Shown here: piece by piece, positions 31,101 to 62,101 of the stretch
How the letters are laid out: the number at the start of each line of letters is the position of its first letter
Position numbering within the stretch: position 1 is the stretch's first letter
From: Hydrolagus colliei
Lineage: Eukaryota
Length of the DNA stretch: 64,000 nt
Assembly: GCA_035084275.1 (NCBI GenBank)
Contig: CM068761.1
Coordinates: 9,114,001 to 9,178,000 of the forward strand
Direction: 5' to 3'
Made by a program: the position numbers and the translations under genes
Notes under the pieces: generated by a model
Database searches by the model: none
Told to the model about the DNA's origin: nothing
What the model saw: the letters and a program-made list of their open reading frames with translations, nothing else

Positions 31101-32268
31101 AAGTATCTGCTGCTTCTCCTTATTGCTTCTCCTGGATGGTGGTTTCCTGGTAGTGAAAGTATCAATCAGAATACTCATTTCCAACTATTTTAAGATTAGA
31201 ACCCAACAGAAAGAAAGTTTTTTCTCTCTCTGTCTTCCCTATTCCTCCCTTCTGATTTCTTCTACCCCCAAGATATCTAGCGTGCTGTTGTCTTAAACTT
31301 TAATAATTGCAGTCTGTTTTGTAGGATCTTTTCAGTCTATTGGGGAGTAGATGAGATGCTTAATCATCTTTTTGGCGAGCTGCTTGCCATGACCGGATGT
31401 GACAGAGTAAATAGAAAACATACAAACATAGAAATTTTCAATGTAGATATTTATCTTAGCTCAGGTGACTGTCTAGCGCCTTGGGACGTCCTCCTGACGT
31501 GAAAGGCGCTATACAAGTGTAATTTTGTTGTTGTTGTATTACCGCTTTCCAGCTCTATTCCCTTATTCCTCAATATTTTTACCGCTCAGTCATTAATAAT
31601 GATAATAATAATCCTTGCATTTGATATAGTGCTTTTCACATCTTCTAGATATCTCAAAGCGCTTCACAGAGTATTCTGTAAAGTGAATTGATAAATTGAC
31701 TATATTTGTGGGTGAAACGCAGCAGCTAATTGCATGCAGCTGTGTCCCACAAACAGTCGTGGATTGAAATGACCAATTTATTATTGTTTATTTTGAGGGA
31801 TTATCATCAGACATGTGGAGTAAGGAAACTTGCCCAAGGTTTCGCCCTGTCTGGAATTGAACCCAGGTCTCTCGTTTGTGAGGCAGGTGCTCTATCCACT
31901 GAGCTACAGGACTCCACAACTCTACCCTAATCCCCGAAACAGGTATCAGCTCAGAAAGACAGATTCAAGAGCATCGGTCTCCCTTGTGACTAGGCCATAG
32001 GCTTGATTTATTTGATGCAATGTCTCACAGTGAGTGGGGATCAACAGTTTAACTCGACAATGTAACTTGCAATGATATTCTCAGCTCACTGATCCACTTC
32101 AATGCACATTGCAAACTCCTTACTTGAAAGATCTTTCTGCTCCTTATCCAGGGTCTGCGGAAAAGAGAGCTGCTAAAGGAGATGCTTCCAGTCATCGGAC
32201 AGAATCTCAGATTCCAGAGACTCTTCACGGAGTACCAGGACCAGCTGGATCTGCTAAAGGACAAGTAG
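1042..32268 (+). CDS. HIRA: Histone chaperone HIRA, 3' part (13 coding exons, about human exons 13-25; 5' exons lie upstream of the window)
   Basis: Exons 1042-1127, 5928-6119, 10194-10364, 10592-10796, 11517-11615, 11870-12018, 16233-16394, 16564-16622, 18486-18591, 23486-23608, 29932-30095, 30190-30278, 32152-32268 splice in frame via GT-AG. Peptides match HIRA from memory (KKQIETRTADGRRRITP, IEPMKALDSRFTERSK, KKKGRPRK, LAYLENQVAAA, GLRKRELLKEMLPVIGQNLRFQRLF). Confidence 0.98.
3123..3985 (-). mobile_element. L2 LINE 3' fragment
   Basis: LKLNVNKTKALLIG and FITSRLNY motifs; (TTG)n tail. Confidence 0.88.
5928..6119 (+). CDS. HIRA: HIRA exon (DFSTAFFNSVP...PNKDG)
   Basis: attag acceptor, gtaagg donor, 192 bp, frame continuous. 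Confidence 0.95.
6264..6663 (-). mobile_element. tRNA-headed DeuSINE, full length
   Basis: GAGTCCTGTAGCT head with A/B boxes, Deu core GTGGGACACTGCTGTGTGCAATTGGCTGCC, (ATT)n tail. Confidence 0.9.
9280..9715 (-). mobile_element. L2 LINE 3' fragment
   Basis: LDYGNSFLVGLP and LHMLQIIKNS motifs. Confidence 0.8.
10194..10364 (+). CDS. HIRA: HIRA exon (...SRIEPMKALDSRFTERSK...)
   Basis: ttcag acceptor, gtacgg donor, 171 bp. Confidence 0.94.
10592..10796 (+). CDS. HIRA: HIRA exon (SSSDSEEK...KKKKGRPRK AT-hook-like motif)
   Basis: tctag acceptor, gtaatg donor, 205 bp. Confidence 0.95.
11517..11615 (+). CDS. HIRA: HIRA exon (AAPTTEKEAL...FKLPTPTPKKAFNMQ)
   Basis: tacag acceptor, gtgagt donor, 99 bp. 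Confidence 0.92.
11870..12018 (+). CDS. HIRA: HIRA exon (VSSDPAMYIEVENE...LTSRILTAAGS)
   Basis: ttcag acceptor, gtaagt donor, 149 bp. Confidence 0.96.
12132..12712 (+). mobile_element. L2 LINE 3' fragment nested in a SINE tail
   Basis: LHKLQIIQ and LHWLPIPQRIEFKIL motifs, TTG tail; SINE tail continues at 12711. Confidence 0.88.
14533..16145 (+). mobile_element. tRNA-headed DeuSINE split by hAT copy A (14533-14660 and 15918-16145)
   Basis: Head left and body/tail right, collinear with the 6264-6663 copy. Confidence 0.85.
14661..15909 (+). mobile_element. Non-autonomous hAT element, copy A (right TIR degenerate), inserted in a SINE
   Basis: Starts TAGGTTCTGTCGATAT, ends ...CTA; 8-bp TSD GTAGTAAG at 14653-14660 and 15910-15917; internal C-rich minisatellite. 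Confidence 0.85.
16233..16394 (+). CDS. HIRA: HIRA exon (DLVSVACEERTLSVFSTSGRRLLP...LSVW)
   Basis: ttcag acceptor, gtaagt donor, 162 bp. Confidence 0.96.
16564..16622 (+). CDS. HIRA: HIRA exon (DAKKLTVLVKDESLITILS)
   Basis: tctag acceptor, gtactg donor, 59 bp. Confidence 0.93.
18028..18445 (+). mobile_element. Older, longer DeuSINE family copy (SacSINE1-like)
   Basis: Head CTCTGAGTCAGAAG, degenerate Deu core; related fragments on the - strand at about 2080-2450, 7290-7560, 8130-8480 and 52850-53620. Confidence 0.65.
18486..18591 (+). CDS. HIRA: HIRA exon (NDITITQSLLTHHGVPVVTLSNGKSYCFNTSLCTW)
   Basis: cacag acceptor, gtaagc donor, 106 bp. Confidence 0.95.
19579..19893 (+). mobile_element. 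tRNA-headed DeuSINE, full length
   Basis: Head, Deu core, ATT tail. Confidence 0.88.
23226..23463 (+). mobile_element. tRNA-headed DeuSINE ending about 20 bp before a HIRA acceptor
   Basis: Degenerate head, tail CAAATGCAAGGATTATT. Confidence 0.82.
23486..23608 (+). CDS. HIRA: HIRA exon (NLISDKQDSLVQCADYRS...LCSGPLA)
   Basis: ttcag acceptor, gtaagt donor, 123 bp. Confidence 0.96.
25156..26205 (-). mobile_element. L2 LINE 3' fragment
   Basis: YADDTQLY, LRNLGVLFD and LHWLPI motifs; (TTG)n tail. Confidence 0.9.
26505..26763 (-). mobile_element. tRNA-headed DeuSINE
   Basis: Head, Deu core, tail. Confidence 0.85.
27196..28509 (+). mobile_element. Non-autonomous hAT element, copy B
   Basis: TAGGGAACGGCGATAT...ATATCGCCGTT; left flank GTATATAC, right residual TATATAC (7-bp terminal deletion). 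Confidence 0.88.
29218..29541 (+). mobile_element. tRNA-headed DeuSINE, full length
   Basis: Head, Deu core, long (ATT)n tail. Confidence 0.9.
29932..30095 (+). CDS. HIRA: HIRA exon (AGRQAARL...LAYLENQVAAA...YLVNEG)
   Basis: tctag acceptor, gtagga donor, 164 bp. Confidence 0.96.
30190..30278 (+). CDS. HIRA: HIRA exon (FEARLRELCKDLLGPVH...QWESTVL)
   Basis: tctag acceptor, gtaaga donor, 89 bp. Confidence 0.96.
30560..31000 (+). mobile_element. L2 LINE 3' fragment
   Basis: ORF2 C-terminal motifs and TTG tail. Confidence 0.8.
31595..31915 (-). mobile_element. tRNA-headed DeuSINE, full length
   Basis: Head, Deu core, tail. Confidence 0.9.
32152..32268 (+). CDS. HIRA: HIRA last coding exon (GLRKRELLKEMLP...LDLLKDK*)
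   Basis: tccag acceptor, 117 bp ending in TAG. Confidence 0.96.
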   Translation, partial: GLRKRELLKEMLPVIGQNLRFQRLFTEYQDQLDLLKDK

Positions 32269-33024
32269 CACTACACAGCATTACAAATGGGATCAATTCT
32301 CAACCCTCTGGGAGATCTGCTCTGTCCAGCCGGTGGCCCAACTCAGGAAAGAAGAACATTGAGGATTTGGGATTAACCCGGGAGAAGAGCCTGTGTTCTG
32401 TTACACAAAGCTGGATCACTCCAGTGGCAGATGTGCTCAGGAAACGGCGGTGCTGGTGCGCTAGCCTGAACATATCATTTCACAATAGCAGTACAGAAGC
32501 ACACTGAATATCCCAGAGATGGTCTGCAACTGCACTGGGAAGCGTTGGTGACTAGGAGGCCGGTGACAGCTCTCTACCCAGCAACTCGTTGCAATTGACC
32601 AAGATGGCATCTGCATCCAACGTGTAACGGACACTGGCCCTCTTATTCGCCAGATAGAGTGACTTGTGGTCGTAGCCCACTATAAGCTACCATGTAACGT
32701 GTACACACGTACTGTGTGAGACACAGCAGCTTCTCAGCTGCCCTGTCCTTTAGCAAAGGATGATTCAGATCTGTGGACTGAAACTCTCCATCTTTTCAGT
32801 TGAAAGATGAGCTGCCGAGTTCAGACTTTTGTATAATGTAGTTTTCTCTTTGGCTGATGTACTAAATTACAAATCCGTTACTGTCTGTCCTTGTTAAAAG
32901 TACAAAATGAAAAAAGAAAAGTTCTAATGAGAGTAACCATGGACCTGGTGGAAATGTACAGAATGCAATCTGCCCTTTGGTACCTTTTAACTGTTTATAC
33001 AGGCACATTTGTTTTTTTTTATAA

Positions 33025-33030
33025 AATAAA
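33025..33030 (+). terminator. Probable HIRA polyadenylation signal AATAAA
   Basis: AATAAA about 760 bp after the stop, following a T-rich tract. Confidence 0.6.
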
Positions 33031-35100
33031 GATAGAATATTGCAGTTCTATTTTTGCCCTTTTGAAGTTGAAATCTGCTCAATTTGCTCATCACTGTCAT
33101 GTGCGTCCATGGCAGACCTGACAGAAGAACCAGGGCTTGATTTATGCTAGAGCAAGGTAACATCCTTCCGAAACTGGACTCTTCCTTTCCTTGGCCAAGC
33201 CAAATGATGCATCACTCAGTTTAATTTTCTTTGCACTTTCAGTAATGTCCGATTACATTGTAGTTTCTGGCACTGACTTTGAAGGAGAAGCCAATCTTCC
33301 TAATTAATTATTAGTGGGCAGGAGAGTGATAGATAGGGAATATCATTTTAATTTAAATAACTGATTGAGATTGATATGTTTACACTCCACTTTCAATCGC
33401 TTGGGGAGTAAATTCACTATCAGCTATAGTACACTATCGCAATCCGCGACCATATCACTCCCACCCTCGCCTGTTTCTATGTCTGGAACTGGCCGAGTGG
33501 AGGCAGCAAGCAGTCGAGTGGGGTTATCAAAGGTAAGGAGTTGCGAGGGTATGAAGGGATTTGAAAACAAGTGAGAGGATCTTGTATTCAATCGTTCGGT
33601 AATTGGGAGCCGGCCTGGCAAGGACTGGCGTGACGGAGGTCTGGAGTTTTGTGGGTATTAGGATCTGGGTGATGAGGTCACTGATCCTGAAGCAGCTGTC
33701 CAGTGCCTCTCCACTTTCAACTCTCTCGTTCCCCTTAAATTCAGGTCTATCTCGAAACCCACCCGCTCCCCCTGGTACAACACTGATCTCCTCTCCCTGA
33801 AAACCCAAACCCGGCTGCTCGAGCGCAGGTGGCAGAAAACCGGCCTCACGGTTCACCACCAACTGTGGCTCGAGCATCTCCACAGCTACCGCCGTTCTTT
33901 GTGTCGAGCAAAAGCGGCTTGCTATTCCAACATTATCCTGGAGGCAAATAACAATCCCAAAGTCCTCTTTTCCACCACCCACCACCTCCTCCGCGCACCC
34001 CCTCAGGCCTCCTCAATCTTCACTTCAAATGCGAAGTGCGAGGAGGTCATGGATTTATTTTCCTCAAAAATCCAAAACATCCGCCAGGCAGCGTCATCCT
34101 CCTGCCTCTCATCTCCCTCTACCACCCCCACCCCATCCCTCTCACCCTCCTAGTCATCAACTTCTACCTCGACCCCCTTCCTACATTCCATCTCCCCAGT
34201 CTCTCTTTCCTCTCTCTCACGCACTCTCACCTCCTTGAAGACAACCACCTGCTGCCTCGACCCCATCCCCACCAACCTACTGCTCACCCAGCTCCACCTC
34301 CTCTGCCCACCTCTGGCTGATATCATCAACCAATCCCCCTCCACGGGATCAGTCCCTGCCCCCTTCAAAACTGCTGCCATCACCTCATTCCTTAAGAAAC
34401 CCTCACTAGCCCTCAAACTCTAGCCACTACCGCCCTATTTCTAACCTGCCCTTCCTTTCAAAAGCACTGGAATGCGTTGTTGCCAATGAACTCCGCACCC
34501 ACATCTCCTCCCACTCCCTCTTCGAACCCTTCCAGCCCTGCCCACAGTACAGAGACTGCGCTTGTGAAAGTCACAAATGACGTCCTCTCTATCTGCGACC
34601 AGGGTTCCCTCTGCCTCCTTATCCACCTGGACCTGTCCGCTGTGTTTGACACAGTCGACCACACCATCCTCCTCCACTGTCTGTCCTCCGTCATCCACCT
34701 CAGTGGGACCGCACTCGCCTGGTTTGAGTCCCACCTCACAAACCGCCAGCAGTACATCTCCACAAACGGCTTGTCCTCCCGCTCTCACCCGGTTACCTGT
34801 GGGGTACCCCAGGGATCCATCCTTGGCTCCCTCCTCTTCCTCATCTATACGCTCCCTCTTGGGGATGTCATCCGCAGACACGGGGCACACTTTCACATGT
34901 ACGCGGATGACACCCAACTCTATTTCTCCACTTCACTTTACGACCCCCAGTCCCCTGATGTTCTGTCAGCCTGCCTGTCAAACATCAGGAGCTGGATGAG
35001 AAAATTTCTTGCAGCTGCATGTTGACAAGATGGAGGCCATACTCTTTGGTTGTTGTCAACGTCTCCATTCACATGGTTCTCACCTCCTCCGCCTTCCCGG

Positions 35101-35384
35101 TAGGGTCCGTCGATATGGAAATTTTCTGATTTCGATATATCGCCGGCTCATATCGAGATATAGCGATATATCTATATTTTCGGGGCTTTCGTATTGCACA
35201 TGCGTGCGCGTTGTGAGGTGCGCGCTCATTCGGAGGTGCGCGCGTATTCGGGGCCTATTTCCTCAGGAGGGAAATATCTCTCTCTCTGTGTCGCTCACTC
35301 TCTCCATCTCTGTGCTTTTCTGTCTGTGTCTCTGTGTCTCTCCTCTCTCACATCCCACCCCACCCCCATCTCTCTCTCTCTCTG

Positions 35385-35454
<70 letters not shown>

Positions 35455-36003
35455 ATCACATTCCCCCCCATCACACATCCCCCCTGTCTCTCCCCTCTCC
35501 TCCCCGTCTCTCCGCCCTCCTCCTCGTCTCTCTCCCTACCACCATTTCTCTCCCGCACCCCATCTCTCTCCCAGTCTCCCTCCCCCTCCCACCGCCGTCT
35601 CTCTCCACCCCCCCGCTGTCTCTCCCCCCCCCCCCCGCCGTCTCTCTCCCCCCCTCCCCAAACTCTCCCCCCCCCCCCCGTCTCTGCCCTCCCATCCCCC
35701 GAAGTCTCTCCCCGGCCATCTCTCCCCCCCCATCTCTCCCCCCCCCGTCTCTCACCCCCCGCCCACACCCCTTGTTTACCTGTGTATTGTATTGGAGGAC
35801 TATGAATACAATATGGCGGCTTGCACCTCAGTCTGTGCATTGTGTATAGAGATGAGCATTCTGGGTCTTGTGCGCGCGCATTCCGATTTTTTTTGATATA
35901 TCGATTTTTCGATATATCGATATTTTTTAAATGTCTGTATCGGCGTATCGATATGAAAATTATATCAGATATAACCGATATATTGATATATCGCCGGACC
36001 CTA
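35101..36003 (+). mobile_element. Non-autonomous hAT element, copy C (complete), inserted in an L2
   Basis: 16-bp TIRs TAGGGTCCGTCGATAT / ATATCGCCGGACCCTA (15 of 16 match); perfect 8-bp TSD CTTCCCGG at 35093-35100 and 36004-36011. Confidence 0.95.
35401..35453. repeat. (TCTG)n microsatellite inside hAT copy C
   Basis: Direct reading. Confidence 0.9.
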
Positions 36004-37734
36004 CTTCCCGGTCTCCCCCTGAAACTCTGAACCTGTGTGCAACCTTGGCGTCAGGCTCGACCGCCAACTCCGGTCCCTCACCAGCACCGCTTCCTTCTAC
36101 CTCCGACAGATTGCCCGCTTCCGGCAATACCTCACCCCAAAAGCCGCTGAAACCCTGATCCATCACCTCACGGCTGGACTATTCCAATGCCCTCCTTGCT
36201 GGTCTCCCCTCCACCACAATCCATAAAATCCAACTCATCCAAAACTCTGCCGCCCGCATACTAACCTGCACCAAATTTCGCTCCTCCATTACCCCTGACT
36301 TCACTGGCCCCGTATCCCCGAGATGATCGACATCAAGATCCACACCCTTGTTTTCAAATCCCTCCACTCCTCTGCACCCCCCTACCTTTGACCTCTCTCC
36401 TCAAACCAGCTCCCATTGCCTTCGCTCCACTGGGTCTGGCCTCCTCCATGTCCCCCGAATCCTCCGATCCACCCTCAGCGGCCATGCCTTCAGCAACTAT
36501 GCCCCGAGGCTCTGGAATTCCCTCCCTCACTATCTTCATCTCACTCCCTCTTTTCTCAGTTTCAGGTCCCAGCTGAAGACCTTTCTCTTCGACCACACCT
36601 TTGGTCACCTTTCTACCCCTGTCCCTGGCTCGGTCCCAGGATCCGCTATTGTGAAATGCTCTGTAGATGCCGTCCGGCGTGGAGGGCGCGATATAAATTG
36701 AAGTTGTTGTTGTTGTTGAGGTTCTGAATTCATTCAGAATTCTGGTGAAACTGGGAGTCCAGCAAGGAGGGCATTTGAAAAATCGGGAAGTGACAAAGGC
36801 GTAAATGAGGGTTTCTGTTTCTGTGGGTGTGAGGTGCAAACAATGTGGGCGTGAGGTGCAAACAATGTGGGCAATGTGGCGGAGTTGGAAAAAAGTGGTC
36901 CTGGTCTCCAAAAAACACACAATAATAAAATTGGTCATATCAATGCACGGCTGTTTGTGGGTCACAGCTGTACGCAATTGGCTGCTGCGTTTCGCCCACA
37001 AATATATAGTCAATTCACTTCACAGTATATTCTGTGAAGGGTTTTGAGACGTCTAGAAGACGTGAAAAGCACTTTATCAAACGCGAGGATTATAATTTTA
37101 TTATCCACCAACTGGGTGGCAGTTACTACAAGGTTATAATTTGTCCTTCAGAACAGTTACTGTACTGTAGTAAAGTATTTACCTCAGAAATGTGATGAGC
37201 TCCAGTTCCTGATCTGACAGAAGAAGACAGGAAACTATTTACTCACTAGCTCTGTGTGTGTGTATGTGTGTATGTGTGTGTCAACATGCACACTTAGTAG
37301 TTGGGATATATCTAAAATGTTAAGTAAAGATTCAGTATGGATATTTAAAGAGGAAATCAAATCAACCCATATTTTAAAACCAGAGTATCAACCCATAGTG
37401 GGCTTGGAAACAACGTATGGTGCCATCAGGAAGCAGTTGTCTTGCTGTGACTCAGGATGGCTTTAAGGCTGGCGAAGAAAAATTTAGTCCTGAGTCTTGG
37501 AGTTCTGGAGCTCAGTCCTGGAGCACTCGCCTGCCAAGCACAAAAGGAGGAATGAGTAAGTGCACAGCAGTGTCCCACGAACAGTTATAGAAGCACAAAT
37601 TTTATTATTGTTTGTTTAACAATAAATTCGTTGCTTCAATAGTTGATGGATAAACTTGGATGTCAAGAATATCAGGCTGGCTGGCACATTGCAAATTGTC
37701 CTGCATTGGACCATCTCCCATGCTGAAGGTAGAT

Positions 37735-39290
37735 GAAGGTAGATTGAAGGTTGATGACCTCCATTCCCTCAAGGGCAGATGCGGGCCGCTGAACGCACCT
37801 GGCTCAAATCCGGGTTAATGGTCCACCGGCACATCTGGCTGGACCTCACGTCACCTCATCGCTCCGCCCTATCCTCCGCTAAATTGTCCTTCTACTCCAA
37901 GATAATCCTGGAGGCGAAGGACAATCTCCGGCTTCTCTTCTCCACCACCAACCATCTCCTCCGACTCCCCGCCTCCCCTTGAACTCCTGCTGTGAAGAGA
38001 TGTTGGATTTCCTTGAGACCAAAATCGAGGCAGGGGGTGGTTGGGGGGAGGGATGGGGTGGATGTGATAATATACAGATAGATAGAGATGGGGGGGATGT
38101 GAGAGAGGAGAGAGACACAGAGACACAGACAGAAAAACACAGAGATGGAGAGAGTGAGTGTGAGAGACACAGAGAGAGAAAGATATTTATCTCCTGAGGA
38201 GATAGGCCCCGAATGCACGCTCATGCGCAGTACGAAAAACCCCAAATATCGATATTTCAGTATATCTCGATTTGAGCCCATCGATATATCTAAATCGGAA
38301 AATTTCCATATCGACGGACCCTAGTATGCGGATGACACCCAAATCTACCTTTCTGCGTCCACCCTCGACTGCAGGACTACTGGTGTTCTGAATGCATGTC
38401 TGTCCGACATTGAGTCCTGGACGAGGGCCAATTTCCTCCAGCTCAATGACAACAAGACGGAAGCGCTCCTGATTGGCTCACATGAGCGCCTCCCCACCTC
38501 AGGCACTGACAACATCAGCATCCAAGGCTGCTCTCTCCACCTCTCGAAGCCAGTCAGGAATCTGGGCATCTTGTTTGACCCCGAACTGTTCTTCCTCCAT
38601 GACAGGTACAGCCTTCCACCACCTCCGCAATATTGCCAGACTCCGCCACTACCACCTCCCCCACCCATGCTGCAGAAACTCTCATTCACGCCTTTATCAC
38701 TTCCAGGCTCAGCTATGGGAACTCTCTCCTCATCAGCCTTCCCAGCTCCTCCCTTCACAGGCTGCAGATCATTTAGAACTCTGCAGCTCATTTACTCTCC
38801 CTCACCAAGCTCCGCGACCACATCATTCCCACCCTCGCCCGTCTCCACTGGCTCCCCATCCCCCAGAGGATCGAATTCAAGATCCTCATCTTCATCTTCA
38901 AGGCCATTCACGGTCTTGCCCCCATCTATCTCTCCGATCTGCTGTCTCCCTATCAGCCTATCCATCCCCCTCTGCTCAGCAGGCTCTGGCCTGCTCCCCG
39001 TCCACCGCCCTAATCACCCTACTTCAGTGGACGGGCTTTCAGCCTCTCTGCTCCCACACTGTGGAACTCCATCCCGCAATCCCTTTGCCTCACTTCTTCT
39101 TTTTCCTCCTCTTCGAGTGTACCTTCTGCTCCCCTCCTAACTCTTCCCCCTCTCCAACTCTCCTTCCCCTTCCCCCTTCCCCGACCCTTCCCACCCTGCT
39201 CGGGTACCGATCTGACTGTTCAGGTGTTTGGGACATCCTCCCGACGTCAAAGGCGCTCTATAAATGTAATTTTGTTGTTGTTGTTGTTGT
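37735..39290 (+). mobile_element. L2 LINE fragment with internal deletion and hAT copy D
   Basis: ORF2 motifs on both sides, YADD at about 38325, (TTG)n tail. Confidence 0.88.
38032..38323 (-). mobile_element. Non-autonomous hAT element, copy D (left end only)
   Basis: Reverse complement of the left TIR and subterminal region of copies A-C; abuts the L2 YADD codons. Confidence 0.88.
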
Positions 39291-39390
39291 ATATTGAATG
39301 GCTGGACAATGAGACAACAGCCGCTGCTGCTGCTGGAAAGATATTTCTGGAATCCAGGTCGTGCACACACAGTCATATATTCAGCAAACG

Positions 39391-39545
39391 AAAACCGAAA
39401 TATCTGGGAACACTCAACAGGTCAGTTCTAACGAAGGGTTAGATATGAAACATTGACTTACTTTTCTTTCTCCATAGATGCTGCCTGACCTGCTGAGTGT
39501 TCCCAGTAATTTCTGTTTTTGTTTCAGATTTACAGCATCTGCAGT
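39391..39545 (+). mobile_element. Penelope-like element terminal remnant with inverted repeat
   Basis: GATGCTGCCTGACCTGCTGAG...CAGCATCTGCAG end plus an inverted copy at 39404-39425; recognised from memory of shark PLE ends. Confidence 0.6.
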
Positions 39546-41004
39546 ATTTTGAGTTTTTGCTAATATATTCAGAGTTTGGTATCTACATTGAGTAACATGT
39601 ATAATGAGAAGCAATGCTTCCCACACTTTACAGTCTATTCTGCGAAGCACTTTGAGATATCTCAATGATGTGATAAGGCGCTATATAAAATGCATAATTA
39701 TTATTCCTGTTTCTGCAATTCATTTCCACCAATGGCTTCTTCTCCAGTCCTCACACTTTAATATGCAGCATTCCTCAGGGCTCTCTCCTTTATAATATCT
39801 GAATGCTCCCGCTCAATGTTATAATCTGCACACTTTCAGTTAATTTTCATACGTGGGATGTATGTAGATAATACCCAGCTCCCTCTCTATGCCTTCACTG
39901 TCATCTCTTAGATGACGGCTGTCCTGACAAAATGCCTGTCAAAAATCAAGTATTGGATGAGAACTAATTTCCTCCAGGTGAATTGTTGACAAGATCGAGG
40001 CCTTCCTGCTTGGCTTCCATTATTTTCTCCTCTTCTCCGGCACAGACAGCTTCCCTATCCATGGATGCACTCTCCACCTCACCGAGCCATTACAGATCCT
40101 CAGGTGTTGTTTGATCCTCAAATGTTCATTAACAACAACAACCTGGATTTATATAGTGCCCATCATGCCAGATGGCATCTCAGAGCACTTCCCAATAATG
40201 GATCCCGGGGTTTAGCCAGGGGAGGGGTAAAAGGTAAACTAAATTGTGGTCAAAAAGAAAGATCTTTAGCCGAGACATGAAAATAAGAATAGAGGGGGCG
40301 AGGCAAAGGGAATGAGGAAAGGAGTTCTTGAGTTTCGGGGCGTAGTGGCTAAAGCCACCGAGGGGGGAACAGAGGATTCAAGGGACAAGGAGGAGGCCAG
40401 ACCCAGTAGAGTGAAGGCAATAGATGCTGTTGTGAGGAGAGAGGAGGTCAGAGAGGTAGGGGTGTGCAGAGGAGAGGATCTTGAGTTAGTATCTTGAAAT
40501 CGATCCTCTCTGAGACAGGGAACCAGTGCAGTCTGGCAAGGACTGGGGTAATCGGAGAATGGAGTTTGGCATGGGTGAGAATGTGTGCAGCAGAATTCTG
40601 CATAACCTGGATTTCATGAATGGTAGCGGAGGGAAGACCGGCAAGGAGGGCATTTGAATAGTTCAAACGAGTGGTGATGAAGGCATGGATGAGGCTTTTG
40701 GCGAGAGATATTGGCGGAGACGGACGATGCATCGGAAGTGGAAGAAGGTGGTGCAGGTGAGCGACAGCATGTGGGGTGGGAAGGATCATTGGGGGGGTCG
40801 AACCTGATGCCTAGGTTGCCTACGAGTTCAGAGAGGTTTAGAGGCAGGTTCGGCAGTTGGAAGGAGGAGAGATTGGCTTGAAGAGAGATAAGCACCTGGT
40901 TAAATTCCGCATTTCCAATTGGTAGAACCGTCGCTTAAAGGGAAGGGACATGTGTCAAGCTGCAGATAGAAAGAGGATGGTAATGTTCTCACACATTTTA
41001 TGTT

Positions 41005-41890
41005 CATAGAATCACAGAATTTTATAGCGCAAAAGGAGGCCATTTGGTCCATCACATCTGTGCCGATTCTTTGAAAAAAACTATTCAAAATCAATCCCAC
41101 TCCCCAGTTCTCTCCCCATTTCCCAGCAAATCCGTCCTCCCCAAATAACCATCCACCTTTTCTTTAAAATTTGTTATTGAATTGGCCTCTATCACCCTTT
41201 CAGGCAATGCATTCCAGAATCAAACAACTTGCTGTGTGAAAAAAATTATCCTCACCTCCCCTCTGCTTCTTTTGGAAAATATTTTAAATCTGTAACCTCG
41301 AGTCACTGAGAAACCCACCAGTAGAAACTGTTCTTCCTTGTTTACCCTGTTGAATGCCCTCGTGATTTTGAAAACCTCTATTAGGTCTCTCTTTGTAACC
41401 TTCCCTGCTCTAATGAGAATACCCAGCCTCGCCAGCCTTTCTTCATAGCTCAAGTCCCTCATTTCTGGTACCATCCTGGTAAATCTCCTCTGCACCCTTT
41501 CCAATGCCTTAACATCCTTCCTAAAGTGTGGTGCCCAGAACTGAACACAGTACTCTAGCTGAAGCCTAACAAACATTTTATAACTTCCTGTCATCCTGAC
41601 TTTTGTACTCTATGCCCCTATTTATAAAGCCTAATATCCCGTATGCAGTCTTGTCTACCTGTCCTGTCACCTTGCATCACCTCCCATACAAAAAACTTCA
41701 TCTGTCATGTGTCTGTCCATTTTATCATTCTGTCTATGTCCTCTTGCAGTCTGCTACTATCCTCCTCACTATTTATTACTTTTCCTAACTTGATATCATC
41801 TGCAAACTTGTACTGTCTATACCCAAGTCCAGATCATCTATATTTATTGTAAAGAGCACTGGTCTAAATACCAAGCCCTGGGGGACTGGT
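41005..41890 (-). mobile_element. CR1 LINE 3' fragment
   Basis: LEYCVQFWAPHFRKDVKALERVQRRFTRM peptide, KFADD motif at about 41790-41810, TTCTATGA-type tail. Confidence 0.9.
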
Positions 41891-41939
41891 TGAGCTGTGT
41901 TCAGTTGGTTTGCCCACCATCAAACCTGTACTTGTTGGA

Positions 41940-44390
41940 GTCAAATGACAAACTAATGGGATATGGATGAGTATAGACCATACTCTTCTGTCCGTGGAAA
42001 AGGCTACTCCCTGAGATCCCCATAAAGGCTCTCACATTGTCTGACATCCTATCCATCTGGTCTTCCGCCGACACAGATCCTGAACCAGCCGTCCATCTGC
42101 ACCATGATTGCAAATTCTCCATCTTCAACTCTCTCATCCCCCTGAAATCCAGGGCCATCTCCAAAGCTACACAATCCTCCTGGTATAACAGTCATCTCCA
42201 CTCCCTAAAAACCAAACCCTGACTGCCCAAGCACAGATGGCAGAAAACCAGCCTGACAGTTCACCACCAACTGTGGCTTGAGCATCTCCACAGCTACTGC
42301 CGTTCTTTGTCACATGAGAAAACGGCTTGCTAATCCGACATCATCCTGGAGGCAAAACACAACACTAAAGTCCCTTTTTCCACCACCCACTACCTCCTCC
42401 GTGCGCCCCCTCAAGCCTCCTTCAATCTTCACATCAAATGCCAAGTACGAGGAGGTCATGGACTTCTTTTCCACCAAAATAAATAATATTCGCCAGGCAG
42501 CCTCATTCTCCTGCCCCATCATCAGCACGTACCATGATCCCCATCCTACATTCCTTCCTCCCCATCTCTACTTCCTCCCTCTCACCCACCATCACTTCAA
42601 TGAAACCCACCACCTGCTGCCTCGACCCCCTTCCCATCAATTTGCTGGTCACCCAGCTCACCCTCCTCTGTCCACTGCTGACTGCCATTATCAATCCGTC
42701 CCTCTCCTCAGAATCAGTCCCTGCCACCCTCAAAACCATTGTCATCACCTCCTCCTCAAAAAACCTACCCTAGCCAATACTGCTCCATTTCAAACTTGCC
42801 TTTCATTGCCAAAGTAAAGTTACTGTCAATCAACTCTGCACCCACCTCTCCTCCCATTCCCTTTGCAAACCCCTCCAGTCCGGTTGTTAGAGATTAAATT
42901 ACTCCTCTCTTTAAAACAGATTTGTTTATTCAGGTATACTCATTGAGCTGACACTAAAGCATATAAAACGACTACAATGCATGCAAAAGCCAACCACTCT
43001 ATTACTTCTGTTCCCTTCCGATTCTTCTTTTACTTTGTTCACCCTTTTCGCCTATTCCTTCTTATCCGATTCTGCCTCGGGTCTCAATATTGCATTATGC
43101 TCTAGTCTTCACTTTTGGAGTTTACCTGTCATCTACCTCTTGTGATAACGCTCCATTACACACTAGGTTTCTCATAATGCAATCTCATACACCAATATAA
43201 TACCCGGCACGCATTCTTCAGGTTAAAAGGGAATAGTCCTTTCTCTTCCTTGCTTCCTCTCAGTCGGTCTCGGGGAAAAGTAGGGGTGTTGATCTCTTTG
43301 GGGGTCTCCTGTCTCGTTACAGCTCTTCCATCAGTTGGTTCCCTTTCTCGAGAGCGGTTTGGCTACTGTCAGTTATAGTTTCTTCCATCAGTTGTTTCTC
43401 CTTCTCGAGAGCGGCTTGGCTACTGTCACATTACAGTATCTTCCATCAGGTCCTTCTCCTTCTGCTCCTCCGTCTCCGCTCTGCTCTATTCCTCTGTCTC
43501 AACACTTTTATCCTTTCTTGGACACATGGTGTTCACGTGAACATCTCATGCCACTCTCGTGCTTATTCACATTCTCTTTTACACCCAACTCTGCCTTTCT
43601 TCGCAAATAAGCTCTTCTTATCGCAGTTTATTCTAGCCGGTTTCTAATGGTGACCTTGACAACTCAAACTATGTGCAGCAACTTCCTTTATCTTGTACAG
43701 CAGTTATACAAAAACATCACATAGCATCATTCTAGCCCACTCTCTGTTTTTAACAGTCTATACTAATTTTATCCAGTTCTTCACCAACTCTAACACGGTT
43801 TCTGCCCTGTCCACAGTTCAGAGAAACTGCGAAAGTTTCACTGAACTGTGAAACTTCAGTGAAAGTCACAAACGACATCCTCTCTATCTGTAACTAGGGC
43901 TCCCTCTGCCTCCTTGTCCTCCTGGATCTCTCTGCCGCTTTCAACACAATCGATCACACCATCATCCTGCACTGTCTGTCCTCCGTCATCCATCTCAATG
44001 GGACCGCAGTTGCCTGGTTCGAGTCCTACCTCACAAACCACCAGCAGTACATCTACACAAATCGCTTTTCCTCCCATCCTCATGCAGTTACCTGTGGGGT
44101 ACCCCAAGGATCCATCTTTGGCCCCCTCCTCTTCCTGATCTACATGCTCCCTCTTGGTGATGTCGTTCATAGACATGAGGTACACTTACACAGATATGCA
44201 GACAACACCCAACTCTATTTTGCCACTTCACTATGCGACCCCCCACCCACCCCCCACCCCCAGTCCCCTGATGTTCTGTCAGCCTGCCTGTCAGGTATCA
44301 CGAGTTGGATGAGTGTGAATGTTGACAAGACGGAAGACATACTCTTTGGCTCTCGTCAACATCTTCAATCACACGGCTCTCAATCCCCCT
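41940..44390 (+). mobile_element. L2 LINE fragment split by the solo LTR
   Basis: RT motifs (FNTIDHTIILHCLS, PQGSIFG, YADN) resume after 43799. Confidence 0.88.
42885..43795 (-). mobile_element. Solo LTR (911 bp; ERV class I or Gypsy type) inserted in an L2
   Basis: TGTTAGAG...CTCTAACA termini; 4-bp TSD CGGT (42881-42884, 43796-43799); L2 resumes in register; internal 57-58 bp repeats. Strand is inferred only from an AATAAA on the - strand at 42925-42930. Confidence 0.85.
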
Positions 44391-45220: not shown

Positions 45221-45292
45221 AACCCGCCCAATGAGGCGAGAACCCGCCCAATGAGGCGAGAAGCCGCCCAATGAGGCGAGATCCCGCCCAAT
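45221..45292. repeat. 20-bp tandem repeat AACCCGCCCAATGAGGCGAG, 3 units plus a partial
   Basis: Direct reading. Confidence 0.95.
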
Positions 45293-46287: not shown

Positions 46288-46293
46288 TTTATT
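46288..46293 (-). terminator. IgL cluster 1 polyA signal AATAAA
   Basis: About 170 bp downstream of the TGA, followed by an A-run. Confidence 0.75.
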
Positions 46294-46459
46294 GCAAACT
46301 CAAACTACTCCACATTTTGATCTAAATTACAACTGCATCGAAATACAGACGGCGCGATACTGTGACACAGTTTGGCTCGTTATCAAAATGTGGGAATGTC
46401 GAATTGAACATTTCTCAACCAGGCTCCGTGGGCAGTACAGTTCAGTACAGTTCCCGGAA

Positions 46460-48991: not shown

Positions 48992-49070
48992 GGTGAGGGT
49001 TGCGAGATCGGTCACAAATTCCAACCGTTTCCTGACAACAACTGACTCTGGGTATCAGCCCGTGGCTCAG

Positions 49071-49133
49071 TTTATGAACTGACCCAATTCTGAACGTCAC
49101 ACGGCGCTGATCAGTTATGCAAATCCCCCGGGG
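49071..49133 (-). promoter_or_regulatory. IgL cluster 1 promoter: octamer ATTTGCAT (49117-49124), CRE-like TGACGTTCA (49091-49099), TATA-like CATAAA (49071-49076)
   Basis: Perfect Ig octamer about 126 bp upstream of the ATG in light-chain orientation; same motifs in copy 2. Confidence 0.85.
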
Positions 49134-50511
49134 CCGCCTGGCCCGGCCCGTTCACCTCCACGCGAGAGCCGGGTGACCAGCGGCTCATTGACAACACTTC
49201 ACACTCACAGGAATAAAGCACAGGATCAGTGGATTCTCAACTCGAATCTGAGACGTTTATACTTTTGTTGTTCGGTTAGCGGATCATTTACCAGCGACAC
49301 ATCAATTCAAACAATGTGGAGGAAATGGTCATCCGGAAATATCACCAAATATTCACATTAAAAAACTGTGGCATTTTTATGAATAAATAACATATTTATA
49401 TAACGTGGTAGATTTGTTGAATTGCAGCTGGAAAGGGTGAAGAATTATAAACTAAATCATGTTTTATAGATAAGTACAAATATTCAAATATCCCAGTTTG
49501 GACTTGGATTCCATTGTAGGTATTTGCTAGTAATAAGTAATAAGAATAATATTTCTTGCATTTGCTGTAGAGAATTTCTTGTCTTCTAAACGCCTCAGGA
49601 ACTTCACAGGATGTACTGTTATTGGAGGGCAAGATGGGTTAGTCAAATGTGCTCAGCAATGTCCAACAACCAGGCATCGATTGAAGTGACCAATTTATCA
49701 TTTATTTTATTATTGTTTAAATGGACGTTGAAAGGTTTCTGTTAATAGTTTCCATGGAGGTAAAGCACGAGTTTCCACACATCAAGTTATGATGTCAACG
49801 AGTCAATTTTACGTTTGTATTGACTTTTTCTTGCTGATTTAACCTAACAATTTACGGGAGTCTCAAGAGGTCTGACTGCCCCACGGCTCCGTCCTACTAA
49901 CAACAACAACAACAACAAAATTACATTGATAAAGCGCCTTTCACGTCGGGAGGATGTGAAAGGCTAAACAGAATTTACGTTTGAGATTGTATCAGCATGG
50001 ATTCCCGCAGCGCAATGGTTACAGCGTTTGCAAAGAAGAGATATGGGTTATTTTGCCGGCAAGGCGAAACCTTGAGCAAGGTTCCTGTTTCCACACTGAC
50101 TGACAATAGTCCCTCGATTAACAGGCAATTGTAAAATTGGTCATTTCAATCCAGAACAGTTTGTGGAGCGCTGCTGTGCGCAGTTTGCTGCCTGTCTTGT
50201 CCACAAAACTACAGTTAATTCACCATCGACTACCCCAATAACACACTCATCACAGTATCCTTTCACACGACATAAAAGAAAAATCCATGTATTATTAGAA
50301 ATCAGGTAAAACAATAAAGAATTTACACATTTGATCACTAGTTAACACATATCTGCCGTTTATTGCAAGCTATGACCTCAATGAATCACTTCTGCGTTTG
50401 TAATGACTTGTTTTTGCTGATATAACATAACAAGTTACAGCAGTCTGTATAGGTCAGCGCCAAGGCTCCGACCCGCGAAACAGAATTAACGTTTGAGATT
50501 GTTTCACCATA

Positions 50512-50770
50512 GAGTCCTGTAGCTCAATGGTTAGAGCACTTGCAAGCAAGAGATATGGGTTGTTTTCCCGGCAGGGCGAAACCTTCAGAAAAGTTTCCTT
50601 TCTCTACACTGTCTGACAATAATCCCTCGAAAAAAACCAATGATACAATTTCAATTCAGGACAATTTGTGGATTCCTCTGTGCGCTGTTTGCTGTCCATC
50701 TCACCAACAAAAATACAGTTAATTCACCATTGCCTACTCCAATAACACACTCCTCACAGCATCCTATTAC
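50512..50770 (+). mobile_element. Degenerate DeuSINE upstream of the IgL promoter (duplicated at about 63624-63880)
   Basis: Head intact, body decayed; present in both duplicated units. Confidence 0.78.
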
Positions 50771-51294
50771 ACTATCAATAACACATGAAAAATCCATCTT
50801 TATTGGACGTCAGAGAAAAGAATATACAATTGACACGTTTGATCACTTCATCCTCTTTAAGCAGTTTGTTACTAAACATTAGATGACAATTTACAGCATT
50901 ATTCTATTATACATTCAAAGACAGCAGAGAACATGGTGTGGATGGGTTAGGTGAAGTGCTGATATTATAAGAGTACATACAGTATTACAGAAGTGGATTG
51001 TGGTGGAGGGAAGCAATTACTTTTCATTGAATAAGGAATAAGATTTCGAATGTAGTCTGATGATTTGCTTTCACAGAACCTTTAATGTAGCAGGAAAATA
51101 TGATATGTTTTAACCGTTCACTGCAGTTTTGGAATGTGTTGATGTGTTCCACTTATTCTGAAAAATCCCAGTTTAGCCCCTGATTCCACCATAGTTAGTT
51201 GGTAAAACTATTGAAATAAATTATATTGACGTCTAGTTATTCCTTATGCGCTGTGCTCGCTTTAGCAGAATAAGTGATTACAGTTTATAAACCA

Positions 51295-58501: not shown

Positions 58502-58593
58502 AACCCGCCCAATGAGGCGAGAACCCGCCCAACGAGGCGAGAACCCGCCCAACGAGGCGAGAACCCGCCCAATGAGGCGAGAACCCGCCCAAT
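58502..58593. repeat. 20-bp tandem repeat AACCCGCCCAA(T/C)GAGGCGAG, 4 units plus a partial
   Basis: Direct reading. Confidence 0.95.
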
Positions 58594-59587: not shown

Positions 59588-59593
59588 TTTATT
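59588..59593 (-). terminator. IgL cluster 2 polyA signal AATAAA
   Basis: Orthologous position to cluster 1. Confidence 0.75.
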
Positions 59594-59759
59594 GCAAACT
59601 CAAACTACTCCACATTTTGATTGGAATTACATCAGCATCGAAATACAGACGGCGCGATACTGTGACACAGTTTGGCTCGTTATCAAAATGTGGGAATGTC
59701 GAATTGAACATTTCTCAACAAGGCTCCGTGGGCAGTACAGTTCAGTACAGTTCCCGGAA

Positions 59760-60082
59760 TCATACACAGGTGGATCTGGCGATGGTTGTTTTAAGAGGAT
59801 CTGCCCGAGCCTCGTGTTTGACCAGACAGGAATACAGCTCGTGTGACTCCCACTCGGAGGCTGGCAGAGTCAGATAACTGCTCACACTGTACGTGTTGTC
59901 CACCTCCTGCTTGATCGCACTCGTTTCAACACCTTCACTTCTGGCGCTGCCATCCACAGTCCACTTGACCTCCACAGCTCCCGGGGTAAAATCATTCACC
60001 AGACACACCAGGGTCGCCTTGCTCTTTGCTGTGATTTGATCTGGTGACGGCGGAAGGACAGTCACCGAAGGGGCCCGTGGGT
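59760..60082 (-). CDS. IGL: IgL cluster 2 constant exon
   Basis: 3 substitutions versus cluster 1; ends STCV*. Confidence 0.96.
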
Positions 60083-62101
60083 CTGGAAATAAAGATTCAG
60101 TTTTGAAAACATCTGCTGAGAACTTTATCATTTCCCTCTGATGGTTTAGCAATATAAAGTGCTCTCCTCTCCACTCCCAATTGATTCGAATCTCAAACTA
60201 ATCTCGCCATGTTAACCTCCAATATATAATCCTATATACCGGCCACTAACTTTACCATTTTGCTAAGATCAACATTTAAATACAAACTCTGGCGGCTGGT
60301 ATTGTGATAGATGTGATTCTCTTTCAGGTAAACCATTGCTATGTTTAGCAGAAACACGTTGATGTTATTCAAACAACTGCTTGTTGTGTTAAAATGATAA
60401 GAAATAGATTAATTACGGCTGGAAAACACGCGAATAATACTGTCGGGATCAATGTGATGAGCGTTGTGGATGCGGGTGTATAATGATTACACTCTAAACG
60501 TTCAGATCAAACCAATTGACAATGCGTTGCAGTGATTAGAGTTCCTGCGATAGAATCCTCTGAAAATAACAGTATATTTGTTGCAGAAACAGTGTGTTTA
60601 GAGTTGACCAGTCACCAGTGAGTTGTGGTCAGACTTCAATTGCACTTTATACCATCATGTTCACAGTGTTTACAGCTCCCGCTGGATATTATTCTAATCT
60701 TTCGCATTTCTATTCTAAACCAATTCTGAATTTGATAATCAATGTGAATTATCAGCGATGATTTGATCCTGTCGATAAAATAACCATTATTAATCAGAAA
60801 TTATCCACAAAATTGCGTTTCAAGTTAGAGATGAACTAAAGTTGGTGTTTGGGCTGGCCATGGGCCAGTGTACCTCCCGCCCACATTCGCTGTTCACTGT
60901 TCTCAACATTTACAGATCAACTTACAGCTTTGCTGCAGTTGGCGATTTGGGTTTTATTTTCCTTCAATAACAAATACCTGGTCAGTAAAGCCGTCGGTGA
61001 AAAAAAGATGATTCACTTTATGGCTGTTTGTGGGACATTGCTGAACACAATAACACGATGGCCACAAATGCACAGTCACTCACTGTACAGTAAATACTGT
61101 GAAGTTCATTGAAATATCTCGACCACAGGGTGACAGTTATTATTGTTGTTATTGCTATTATACATGCAGTATTATTAAGAACAATACAATACAGTACGGG
61201 CTGAGATTTGTTTTGGGAATGTCGGGTTTGTAACAAGATTCGATGCGAATCGGAATACAGTCGGTTACAATACAACACCATCTACATTGATGTCGCGATT
61301 GCCTGGCAGGAGGATTTCGCAAATGGCCATAACAAGTGAAACTGAATTAAAACAGGAGAATATCGCATTCAATTGATACAATGGGATTCATACGGTAAAC
61401 TTCTCACTACCAAGAATTCAAATATATACCTATCACGTTAGAAAGGTTATCAATGAGGTCAGAATATTAATGCAAATGATTTTTCGAAAAATAATTGAGC
61501 TCAATGTAAAATACAGCGCCAGATAAATGATGAATAAAAACCCAATCTGTACCAAATCAGGAATATACTTACCACCAATCCCCACTCTGGTCCCTTTACC
61601 GAAGACATAGCCCGATTCCCACACAGCACAGTAATAATCAGCGGCGTCATCCGCCTGAACACTGGAGATGATTAAATCGCCAGACCTGGAATCCCTGGAG
61701 CCCGAGAATCGATCGGAAACTCCCGACATCCTGGTGAAGCTGTTCACTCCATTAGTGTACAGGAGATACTGAGGAGCATTCCCCGGCCTTTGCTGGTACC
61801 AATACACATATTCGCTGCTAATTCTGCCCCCAGTCATGGTACAACCCAGGGTCAACTTCTCTCCCAGGGAGGTAGAGACCGACGGCGGCTGATGTAAGGC
61901 TGGCAGCGAGTTTACACCTGTAAAACAGTAAGTCAGGAGAACACATAACAATACATGATGATTCTCAAATAAAAGGCAAATGAAAGCTCTCAGCCCATGT
62001 ACCCAACACAAGAACAAAGAACAGGAGCAATAATAATCCCTGAAGGACTCACAGTGGAGGCAAGTCATCAATGTGGCGAGAAATGGAATCCAAGGCGCCA
62101 T
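59760..62101 (-). CDS. IGL: Immunoglobulin lambda-type (type II) light chain, germline-joined VJ, cluster 2 (238 aa)
   Basis: Leader 62101-62053, VJ 61917-61573, C 60082-59760; intact frame and splice sites; 8 nt differences from cluster 1 in 717 coding nt. Confidence 0.96.
61573..61917 (-). CDS. IGL: IgL cluster 2 pre-joined VJ exon
   Basis: Same CDR3/J junction as cluster 1; 5 substitutions elsewhere. Confidence 0.96.
62053..62101 (-). CDS. IGL: IgL cluster 2 leader exon
   Basis: Identical to cluster 1 leader. Confidence 0.93.

What the first reader, a model, noticed from the sequence alone, without database searches (positions are those of the whole stretch)
32152..62101. Ig lambda-type clusters directly abut the 3' end of HIRA, echoing human 22q11
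Seen: HIRA (+) and the first IgL cluster (-) are convergent, with polyA signals about 13 kb apart and only repeats between them. Established: human HIRA (22q11.21) and IGL (22q11.22) are a few Mb apart. Inference: this is ancestral jawed-vertebrate linkage, giving synteny support that cartilaginous-fish type II light chains are true lambda orthologues. It would also fix one edge of the multicluster locus.
Basis: partly seen in the sequence, partly recalled or inferred. Interest (0 to 1): 0.72.

Follow-up and report, generated by a model that had tools for sequence, protein, structure and literature searches.

The report
HIRA beside chimaera lambda light-chain array
In this chimaera-type genome the housekeeping gene HIRA ends 13 kb, tail to tail, from the first of a row of ready-joined lambda antibody light-chain genes. 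This extends to cartilaginous fish a HIRA-lambda neighbourhood already known in land vertebrates, but the tight abutment could not be shown in other species.

Summary
The window carries the last 12 coding exons of HIRA on the + strand, ending in a stop at 32266-32268 and a conserved AATAAA at 33025. Two intact germline-joined L-VJ-C light-chain clusters lie on the - strand at 46.3-49.1 kb and 59.6-62.2 kb. The two poly(A) signals are 13.26 kb apart. Between them are only retroelement pieces, SINE-like copies and CT-rich low-complexity DNA, with no Ig remnant and no other gene.

V and C are lambda-like by best matches, and C groups with tetrapod lambda against catfish light chains. No kappa or sigma references could be obtained, so the full isotype tree was not done.

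HIRA/MRPL40 is already the published flanking marker of tetrapod Ig-lambda loci (PMC4762898), so linkage in a chimaera fits an old linkage group. The abutment itself is not shown to be ancestral: ten other species have no Ig exon or called gene within 10 kb 3' of HIRA, a reach shorter than the gap here.

Unique colinear anchors with Callorhinchus run to 41.0 kb, arguing against a misjoin up to there.

This scan already noted, on other DNA of the same genome, lambda arrays next to GP1BB 312 kb upstream and a DDT exon past this array. I did not check either. If true, this is an inner edge of the locus, not its outer edge.

The parts
1039..30278 (+). HIRA internal coding exons for residues ~444-980: 1039-1128, 5929-6120, 10255-10365, 10581-10796, 11517-11627, 11864-12016, 16234-16395, 18476-18592, 23487-23606, 29927-30097, 30189-30278 (HSP limits, not exact splice sites)
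   Evidence: tblastn with P0050 and P0039 and translations. Pfam Hira and PDB 5yje match on the 29.9 kb exon. Introns are colinear with Callorhinchus HIRA at about 80%.
32146..32268 (+). Last HIRA coding exon (residues 979-1018) with its stop codon
   Evidence: 80% identity to P0050 residues 979-1018, then TAA/stop
32269..33045 (+). HIRA 3'UTR with poly(A) signal AATAAA at 33025-33030
   Evidence: 91-99% identity to Callorhinchus L002, falling to 82-86% just past the shared AATAAA. It is the only AATAAA in 31-34 kb.
33046..44565 (.). Intergenic interval made of repeats. It holds two copies of an RT-bearing element (33708-35082 and 42116-44382), a LINE tail ORF (41220-41594), a SINE-like unit (36906-37104) and a CT-rich low-complexity block (35100-35996). 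It also holds three unique anchors shared with Callorhinchus (37103-37483, 39560-40125, 40871-41002).
   Evidence: Self-BLAST, TRF, Pfam RVT_1, no other domain, no Ig remnant, anchors
44566..50888 (-). Repeat unit of lambda cluster 1, the edge unit of the array. It is 94-98% identical to 57856-64000, with a period of 13.3 kb.
   Evidence: blastn of the two halves. The interval before 44566 is not colinear with the inter-cluster spacer.
46288..46782 (-). Cluster 1 C exon (46782-46460, stop TGA at 46462-46460) and 3'UTR with AATAAA at 46293-46288
   Evidence: C1-set 3e-27, sequence and motif positions, best PDB domain is human C-lambda at 90 bits
48463..48807 (-). Cluster 1 germline-joined VJ exon (...YYCAVWESGYVFGKGTRVGIG) with no RSS and a GTAAGT donor at 48462
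   Evidence: Sequence, V-set, best PDB matches are human V-lambda 1 and 6 with lambda J
48943..49124 (-). Cluster 1 leader exon (ATG at 48991, donor after 48943) and promoter octamer ATTTGCAT at 49124-49117
   Evidence: Sequence and motif scan
59588..62234 (-). Cluster 2: AATAAA 59593-59588, C exon 60082-59760, VJ exon 61917-61573, leader ATG 62101, octamer 62234-62227
   Evidence: Motif scan. C is 98% and V is 95.5% identical to cluster 1 at the protein level.
45221..45292 (.). 20-bp CCAAT-bearing minisatellite about 1 kb 3' of the C exon: 3.6 copies here and 4.6 copies at 58502-58593
   Evidence: TRF

Best explanation
This is a true chromosomal neighbourhood in a chimaeroid (holocephalan) genome. 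The 3' end of the histone-chaperone gene HIRA lies tail to tail, 13.3 kb away, from the first unit of a tandem array of lambda (cartilaginous-fish type II/NS3) light-chain clusters. Each unit is a self-contained gene on the opposite strand to HIRA: octamer promoter, leader, a V exon already fused to J in the germline, a 1.7 kb intron, one C exon and a poly(A) signal. It needs no RAG rearrangement to be expressed. The 11.5 kb between the genes is transposon debris. The neighbourhood most likely reflects retention of the lambda locus in the same ancestral linkage group that carries HIRA/MRPL40 next to Ig-lambda in tetrapods. The exact tail-to-tail abutment may be specific to chimaeras.

Shown: the gene identities, intactness, orientation, distances and repeat content, and colinearity with Callorhinchus to 41 kb. 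Inferred: the age of the linkage, and expression.
For: HIRA exon map through the stop codon and a conserved 3'UTR and AATAAA.

Two intact clusters with all signals present.

A tandem unit of 13.3 kb at 94-98% identity that begins at 44566.

Lambda affinity. The closest proteins are Squalus, Callorhinchus and Mustelus light chains at 68-82%, then only bird and camel lambda at 47-54%. The best PDB C domain is human C-lambda and the best V matches are human V-lambda. In the tree, C joins chondrichthyan type II (92/91) inside a 100/100 group with tetrapod lambda, apart from catfish chains. All lambda genes of cartilaginous fish studied so far are germline-joined (PMC4279169).

Contiguity. The window has no N. 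Three unique colinear anchors with the independent Callorhinchus assembly lie 3' of HIRA, as far as window 41002.

Old linkage. HIRA/MRPL40 flank Ig-lambda in human, mouse, chicken, Anolis and Xenopus (PMC4762898). True lambda of sterlet and gar lies by IFT81, which from my own knowledge is a 12q24 gene; 12q24 and 22q11 orthologues share chicken chromosome 15 (PMC5985310).
Against: No read-level or Hi-C check was possible, and 41.0-44.6 kb has no cross-species anchor.

In Callorhinchus, Leucoraja, Rhincodon, Stegostoma and paddlefish the first 10 kb 3' of HIRA hold no Ig exon. In Heptranchias, Scyliorhinus, Hemiscyllium, Narcine and Cetorhinus no gene is called there.

Gene order differs from human.

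Kappa, sigma and sigma-2 were not in the tree.
Confidence: 0.7

Rival explanations
1. The adjacency is real but secondary. Lambda clusters, which spread by tandem and dispersed duplication in cartilaginous fish, moved or expanded into the space 3' of HIRA only in the chimaeroid lineage, or in this species alone. The abutment would then say nothing about lambda orthology.
For: No Ig exon or called gene within 10 kb 3' of HIRA in ten other species. The two units are only 2-6% diverged, so the array is young in its present form. HIRA's 3' side is not the IGL side in human (my own knowledge). Paddlefish keeps UFD1-C22orf39-MRPL40-HIRA with nothing Ig-like behind it.
Against: The 10 kb reach is shorter than the 13-14 kb gap here, and Callorhinchus carries an extra retroelement at just that place. 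Lambda is linked to HIRA/MRPL40 across tetrapods. Unchecked notes of this scan report lambda clusters beside GP1BB in four other cartilaginous-fish lineages and a DDT exon past this array.
Confidence: 0.2
2. Assembly misjoin. HIRA and the light-chain array were wrongly joined inside the repeat-rich stretch, most plausibly between 41.0 and 44.6 kb.
For: The stretch is built of interspersed repeats with two copies of one element in the same orientation. No cross-species anchor lies beyond 41002.
Against: No gap or N anywhere in the window. Colinearity with an independent assembly of another genus covers 33-41 kb. The repeat copies are only 74-80% alike, too diverged to confuse a long-read assembler.
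Confidence: 0.07

Closest known systems
Tetrapod Ig-lambda locus flanked by HIRA/MRPL40 on one side and GNAZ/RTDR1 on the other (human 22q11, mouse chr16, chicken chr15, Anolis, Xenopus type III; PMC4762898)
   Same: A lambda-type light-chain locus lies on the same chromosome stretch as HIRA. MRPL40 sits head to head with HIRA in Callorhinchus, Heptranchias, Leucoraja, Scyliorhinus, Narcine, Rhincodon, Stegostoma, Cetorhinus and paddlefish, but was not listed within 10 kb of Hemiscyllium HIRA.
   Different: The distance here is 13 kb instead of hundreds of kb to Mb. The array lies on HIRA's 3' side and is convergent with it. The locus is a row of one-V, one-J, one-C clusters with V already joined to J, not a translocon.
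Cartilaginous-fish type II / NS3 (lambda) light-chain clusters, germline-joined (Dooley and Flajnik; Criscitiello and Flajnik 2007, as reviewed in PMC4279169)
   Same: The L-VJ-C cluster spans about 2.8 kb, VJ is fused in the germline, and C is 68-82% identical to Squalus, Mustelus and Callorhinchus chains. The clusters form a tandem multicluster array.
   Different: Nothing essential. This is another species' copy, seen here with its flanking gene.
GP1BB-lambda neighbourhood found earlier in this scan in the same genome (s1-138772)
   Same: It is another 22q11.21 gene within about 10 kb, tail to tail, of a lambda cluster, on the same assembled piece 312 kb upstream.
   Different: It is a different gene, a different array and the other side of the HIRA block. 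I did not check that note.
True lambda of sterlet and the C-lambda pseudogene of gar, linked to IFT81 (PMC5985310)
   Same: Lambda is tied to the 12q24/22q11-type linkage group outside tetrapods.
   Different: The marker gene differs. In paddlefish nothing Ig-like lies in the 10 kb behind HIRA.

Membership tests
Ig lambda (cartilaginous-fish type II/NS3) light-chain cluster | One V-set and one C1-set domain encoded as leader, V(J) and C exons | tested here: met
   Pfam V-set about 1e-15 and C1-set 3e-27 for both clusters. Exon and splice anatomy read from the sequence.
Ig lambda (cartilaginous-fish type II/NS3) light-chain cluster | V and J joined in the germline, as in all lambda genes of cartilaginous fish studied so far (PMC4279169) | tested here: met
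   The V exon runs without an RSS into ...YVFGKGTRVGIG and a GTAAGT donor in both clusters. Literature.
Ig lambda (cartilaginous-fish type II/NS3) light-chain cluster | C domain groups with lambda and not with kappa, sigma or sigma-2 | tested here: inconclusive
   All named non-chondrichthyan hits are lambda. The best PDB domain is human C-lambda at 90 bits. The tree joins C to tetrapod lambda at 100/100 against catfish chains. No kappa, sigma or sigma-2 sequence could be fetched, and the Atlas scored lambda and kappa clusters equally at 0.97.
Ig lambda (cartilaginous-fish type II/NS3) light-chain cluster | V domain of lambda type | tested here: met
   The best PDB alignments are human V-lambda 1 and V-lambda 6 with lambda J, at 88-90 bits per domain.
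Ig lambda (cartilaginous-fish type II/NS3) light-chain cluster | Transcribed and spliced as a light chain | not testable with these tools
HIRA orthologue | Hira domain and C-terminal region colinear with vertebrate HIRA to the last residue | tested here: met
   Residues 444-1018 map in order on the + strand and end in a stop. Pfam Hira and PDB 5yje match. 83.8% identity to the chondrichthyan HIRA cluster representative P0264.
HIRA orthologue | Orthologous position: same locus as HIRA of a related species, next to MRPL40 | tested here: met
   Introns and 3'UTR are colinear with the Callorhinchus HIRA locus L002 at 80-99%. That locus has MRPL40 and C22orf39 upstream. The window itself starts inside HIRA, so MRPL40 is not in it.
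HIRA orthologue | N-terminal WD40 propeller | not tested
   It lies upstream of the window.
Conserved Ig-lambda / HIRA-MRPL40 synteny | A lambda locus and HIRA on one uninterrupted chromosome stretch | tested here: met
   13.26 kb between the poly(A) signals with no N. Support from an independent assembly reaches only 41.0 kb.
Conserved Ig-lambda / HIRA-MRPL40 synteny | The same neighbourhood in other cartilaginous fishes | tested here: inconclusive
   No Ig exon in 10 kb 3' of HIRA in Callorhinchus, Leucoraja, Rhincodon and Stegostoma. No called gene there in Heptranchias, Scyliorhinus, Hemiscyllium, Narcine and Cetorhinus. The tool reaches 10 kb, while the gap here is 13-14 kb.
Conserved Ig-lambda / HIRA-MRPL40 synteny | Same gene order and orientation as human 22q11 | not testable with these tools
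   No human or tetrapod genome could be read here. From my own knowledge, human HIRA's 3' end faces CLTCL1/SLC25A1 and IGL lies about 2.6 Mb away on the MRPL40 side, so the order differs.

The most novel reading that the evidence does not exclude
In chimaeras the 22q11.21 gene block GP1BB...MRPL40-HIRA (about 310 kb) sits inside the lambda multicluster locus. Lambda arrays would abut both of its ends, and DDT would lie beyond the second array. The gnathostome ancestor would then have had lambda clusters interleaved with 22q11 genes, and the single tetrapod IGL locus a few Mb from HIRA would be what remains after loss and inversion. That would give a synteny rule for naming cartilaginous-fish light-chain loci, which large surveys still leave unlabelled (PMC13320880).
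Probability: 0.35. Interest if true: 0.55.

Novelty: new member of a known kind. Interest (0 to 1): 0.35.

Why it matters
Light-chain isotypes of cartilaginous fish are assigned from short, saturated C- and V-domain trees. The recent VGP survey did not separate light-chain types in cartilaginous or ray-finned fishes at all (PMC13320880). A flanking single-copy gene that is also the standard marker of tetrapod Ig-lambda gives independent positional evidence that type II clusters are lambda. It also gives a fixed landmark for counting and comparing clusters between species.

The gain is modest. The lambda assignment of type II is already accepted, HIRA-lambda synteny is textbook for tetrapods, and the genes themselves are ordinary. 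I found no paper in the searchable library that states HIRA-lambda linkage for a cartilaginous fish. That library lacks most subscription journals.

Tried and rejected

2. HIRA of cartilaginous fish by homology search. A teleost HIRA query returned only ray-finned fishes. A first mixed alignment, A1, was misaligned by MAFFT and was dropped, and A2 was also dropped. The cleaned alignment A3 surfaced one Logan protein, P0264. Its 90% cluster gave the chondrichthyan HIRAs.

3. Cross-species neighbourhood. Bowfin HIRA was not on record, and the Mustelus lambda gene gave no DNA and no neighbours. The other ten look-ups (nine chondrichthyans and paddlefish) showed nothing Ig-like within 10 kb 3' of HIRA. 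This does not reject the idea, because the reach is too short.

4. Full isotype tree. Only a lambda-versus-catfish tree was built. The Atlas look-up did not separate lambda from kappa.

5. Hidden gene or dead Ig cluster in the interval. This was rejected. There was no credible Pfam hit apart from RVT_1, no tblastn remnant, and the interval is not colinear with the inter-cluster spacer.

6. The bacterial promoter scan is irrelevant to a vertebrate gene and was ignored.

7. Two papers (PMC7094790, PMC12010099) and the elephant-shark supplements were not held.


Full report
WHAT IS THERE

The window has no N runs.

On the + strand it carries the 3' half of HIRA. A full-length HIRA (P0050, Alosa, 1018 aa, found) aligns by tblastn to 12 ordered exons between 1039 and 32265. 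These cover residues 444-1018, and a stop codon follows at 32266-32268. The exon at 29927-30097 matches Pfam Hira (2.3e-13) and the human HIRA C-terminal domain in PDB 5yje (4e-25).

The 3'UTR at 32266-33065 is 91-99% identical to that of Callorhinchus milii. Identity falls to 82-86% right after an AATAAA at 33025 that both species share. This is the only AATAAA in 31-34 kb, so HIRA ends near 33045.

On the - strand there are exactly two V and two C exons, forming two clusters.

Cluster 1 has these parts:
- octamer ATTTGCAT at 49124-49117
- leader ATG at 48991
- leader exon to 48943
- VJ exon 48807-48463
- J-C intron
- C exon 46782-46460
- AATAAA at 46293-46288

The V exon runs straight into a J (...YYCAVWESGYVFGKGTRVGIG) and a GTAAGT donor with no recombination signal. 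It is therefore joined in the germline.

Cluster 2 repeats every signal 13.1-13.3 kb further on. Its leader ATG at 62101 is the finding's end coordinate.

The repeat unit 44566-50888 matches 57856-64000 at 94-98%. The proteins differ at 5 of 112 V residues and 2 of 106 C residues.

THE INTERVAL

The two poly(A) signals face each other 13.26 kb apart.

Of 33000-44566, 58% has another copy elsewhere in the window. The content is:
- an element with a reverse-transcriptase fragment, present twice in the same orientation at 74-80% identity (33708-35082 and 42116-44382; RVT_1)
- a LINE-tail ORF at 41220-41594
- a SINE-like unit of about 190 bp with many copies, also abundant in Callorhinchus
- a CT-rich low-complexity block that recurs in two HIRA introns

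Ten further ORFs have no credible Pfam hit; the only one listed, a phage family at E=0.092, is far below its cut-off. There is no Ig remnant even at E<=5. The interval is not a decayed copy of the inter-cluster spacer. The array therefore truly starts at about 44.57 kb.

WHICH ISOTYPE

The closest proteins to the C exon are light chains of Squalus acanthias (70-72%), Callorhinchus (82% over part) and Mustelus ('lambda-1-like', 68%). After those come only bird and camel lambda chains (47-54%), then catfish chains (36-39%).

Against all PDB chains, with no word filter, the best single domain is human C-lambda at 90 bits, against 34-45 bits for gamma CH domains. The V exon's best PDB alignments are human V-lambda 1 and V-lambda 6 with lambda J.

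A maximum-likelihood tree of the C domains puts the two window exons with the chondrichthyan chains (92/91). That group sits inside a 100/100 group with tetrapod lambda, across a long branch from the catfish chains. The review literature equates type II/NS3 with lambda and says all lambda genes of cartilaginous fish studied are germline-joined (PMC4279169).

The weak point is that I could not obtain kappa, sigma or sigma-2 references. The Atlas look-up gave lambda and kappa clusters the same score.

IS THE JOIN REAL

Indirect support comes from the independent assembly of another genus. Beyond the HIRA 3'UTR, three segments that are unique in both sequences lie in the same order and orientation in Callorhinchus locus L002:
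- window 37103-37483 with L002 63102-63453
- window 39560-40125 with L002 63699-64286
- window 40871-41002 with L002 64342-64464

So 33-41 kb belongs behind HIRA. The stretch 41.0-44.6 kb has no such anchor. The repeats there are too diverged (74-80%) to mislead a long-read assembler, and there is no gap. I put a misjoin at about 7%.

IS THE NEIGHBOURHOOD OLD

For tetrapods it is established. HIRA and MRPL40 are used as flanking markers of Ig-lambda in human, mouse, chicken, Anolis and Xenopus (PMC4762898). In sterlet and gar, true lambda lies by IFT81 (PMC5985310). From my own knowledge IFT81 is a 12q24 gene, and 12q24 and 22q11 orthologues share chicken chromosome 15 with IGL.

For cartilaginous fish I found no published statement in the searchable library.

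I then tried to test other species directly. After two detours, an alignment of paddlefish and bowfin HIRA with eight window exons brought up P0264. It is 83.8% identical to the window's HIRA. Its 90% cluster holds HIRA of thirteen cartilaginous fishes.

Look-ups with 10 kb flanks gave these results:
- MRPL40 is head to head with HIRA in eight of the nine chondrichthyans and in paddlefish. It was not listed within 10 kb of Hemiscyllium HIRA.
- There is no Ig exon in the 10 kb 3' of HIRA in Callorhinchus, Leucoraja, Rhincodon, Stegostoma and paddlefish.
- No gene is called there in Heptranchias, Scyliorhinus, Hemiscyllium, Narcine and Cetorhinus.

This does not settle the matter. The tool reaches 10 kb past the stop codon, while the C exon here is 14.2 kb past it. 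In Callorhinchus the last 5 kb of the flank is a retroelement absent from the window. Elasmobranch genomes are also several times larger.

The abutment is therefore neither confirmed nor excluded elsewhere. I give 20% to the rival that the array reached HIRA's 3' side secondarily.

ORDER COMPARED WITH HUMAN

From my own knowledge, human HIRA's 3' end faces CLTCL1/SLC25A1 on the centromere side. IGL lies about 2.6 Mb away on the MRPL40 side. So the window echoes human 22q11 as shared linkage, not as shared order.

WHAT THIS SCAN NOTED BEFORE

These notes are unchecked leads. In the same genome, lambda arrays lie 312-500 kb before this window, the last one 9 kb from GP1BB. That neighbourhood was reported in four other cartilaginous-fish lineages (s1-138772). 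The array that begins here continues beyond the window (s1-138862). A DDT exon is said to lie 6.6 kb from it, about 61 kb past the window's end (s1-139003).

If these hold, the block GP1BB...MRPL40-HIRA is embedded between two lambda arrays. In that case 44.57 kb is an inner edge of the locus, not its outer edge. It would also strengthen the old-linkage reading, since HIRA and DDT lie on opposite sides of human IGL (my own knowledge).

VERDICT

The kind of thing is known: lambda-HIRA synteny, and germline-joined type II clusters. What is new is a chimaera example at very short range, useful as a positional landmark. Interest is moderate to low.

Noticed in passing
L002:61388-61771 (Callorhinchus, - strand), compared with window 5739-6117: About 1.7-2.1 kb after its HIRA stop codon, Callorhinchus carries an inverted 86% copy of a HIRA intron piece plus the exon for residues ~474-529. 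The window's own interval has no such copy.
   Followed up: partly
window 48367 and 61477 (- strand): A second ATTTGCAT octamer lies in the J-C intron about 95 bp after the J donor, conserved in both clusters. It may be an intronic regulatory site or may mean nothing.
   Followed up: no
window 45221-45292 and 58502-58593: A 20-bp minisatellite AACCCGCCCAATGAGGCGAG with a CCAAT core lies about 1 kb 3' of each C exon, with 3.6 copies in one cluster and 4.6 in the other.
   Followed up: partly
window 32266-33065: The HIRA 3'UTR is 91-99% identical between this chimaeroid and Callorhinchus, while the introns are about 80%. About 800 bases of UTR appear to be under strong constraint.
   Followed up: partly
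window 14660-15883, 27192-28507, 35100-35996, 38033-38327: The same CT-rich low-complexity block, with reading frames full of PSLS/SPPP runs, recurs four times. Two copies are in HIRA introns and two in the intergenic interval. It is probably the tail of one transposon family.
   Followed up: no
window 48323-48462 (- strand): Reading through the J donor gives an open frame with a hydrophobic tail. I saw the frame in the ORF list but did not test it.
   Followed up: no
L001 (paddlefish CM030274.1:21987521-22022971): Paddlefish HIRA spans only 15 kb, against about 50 kb in Callorhinchus and 66-190 kb in elasmobranchs. It keeps UFD1, C22orf39 and MRPL40 directly upstream.
   Followed up: no
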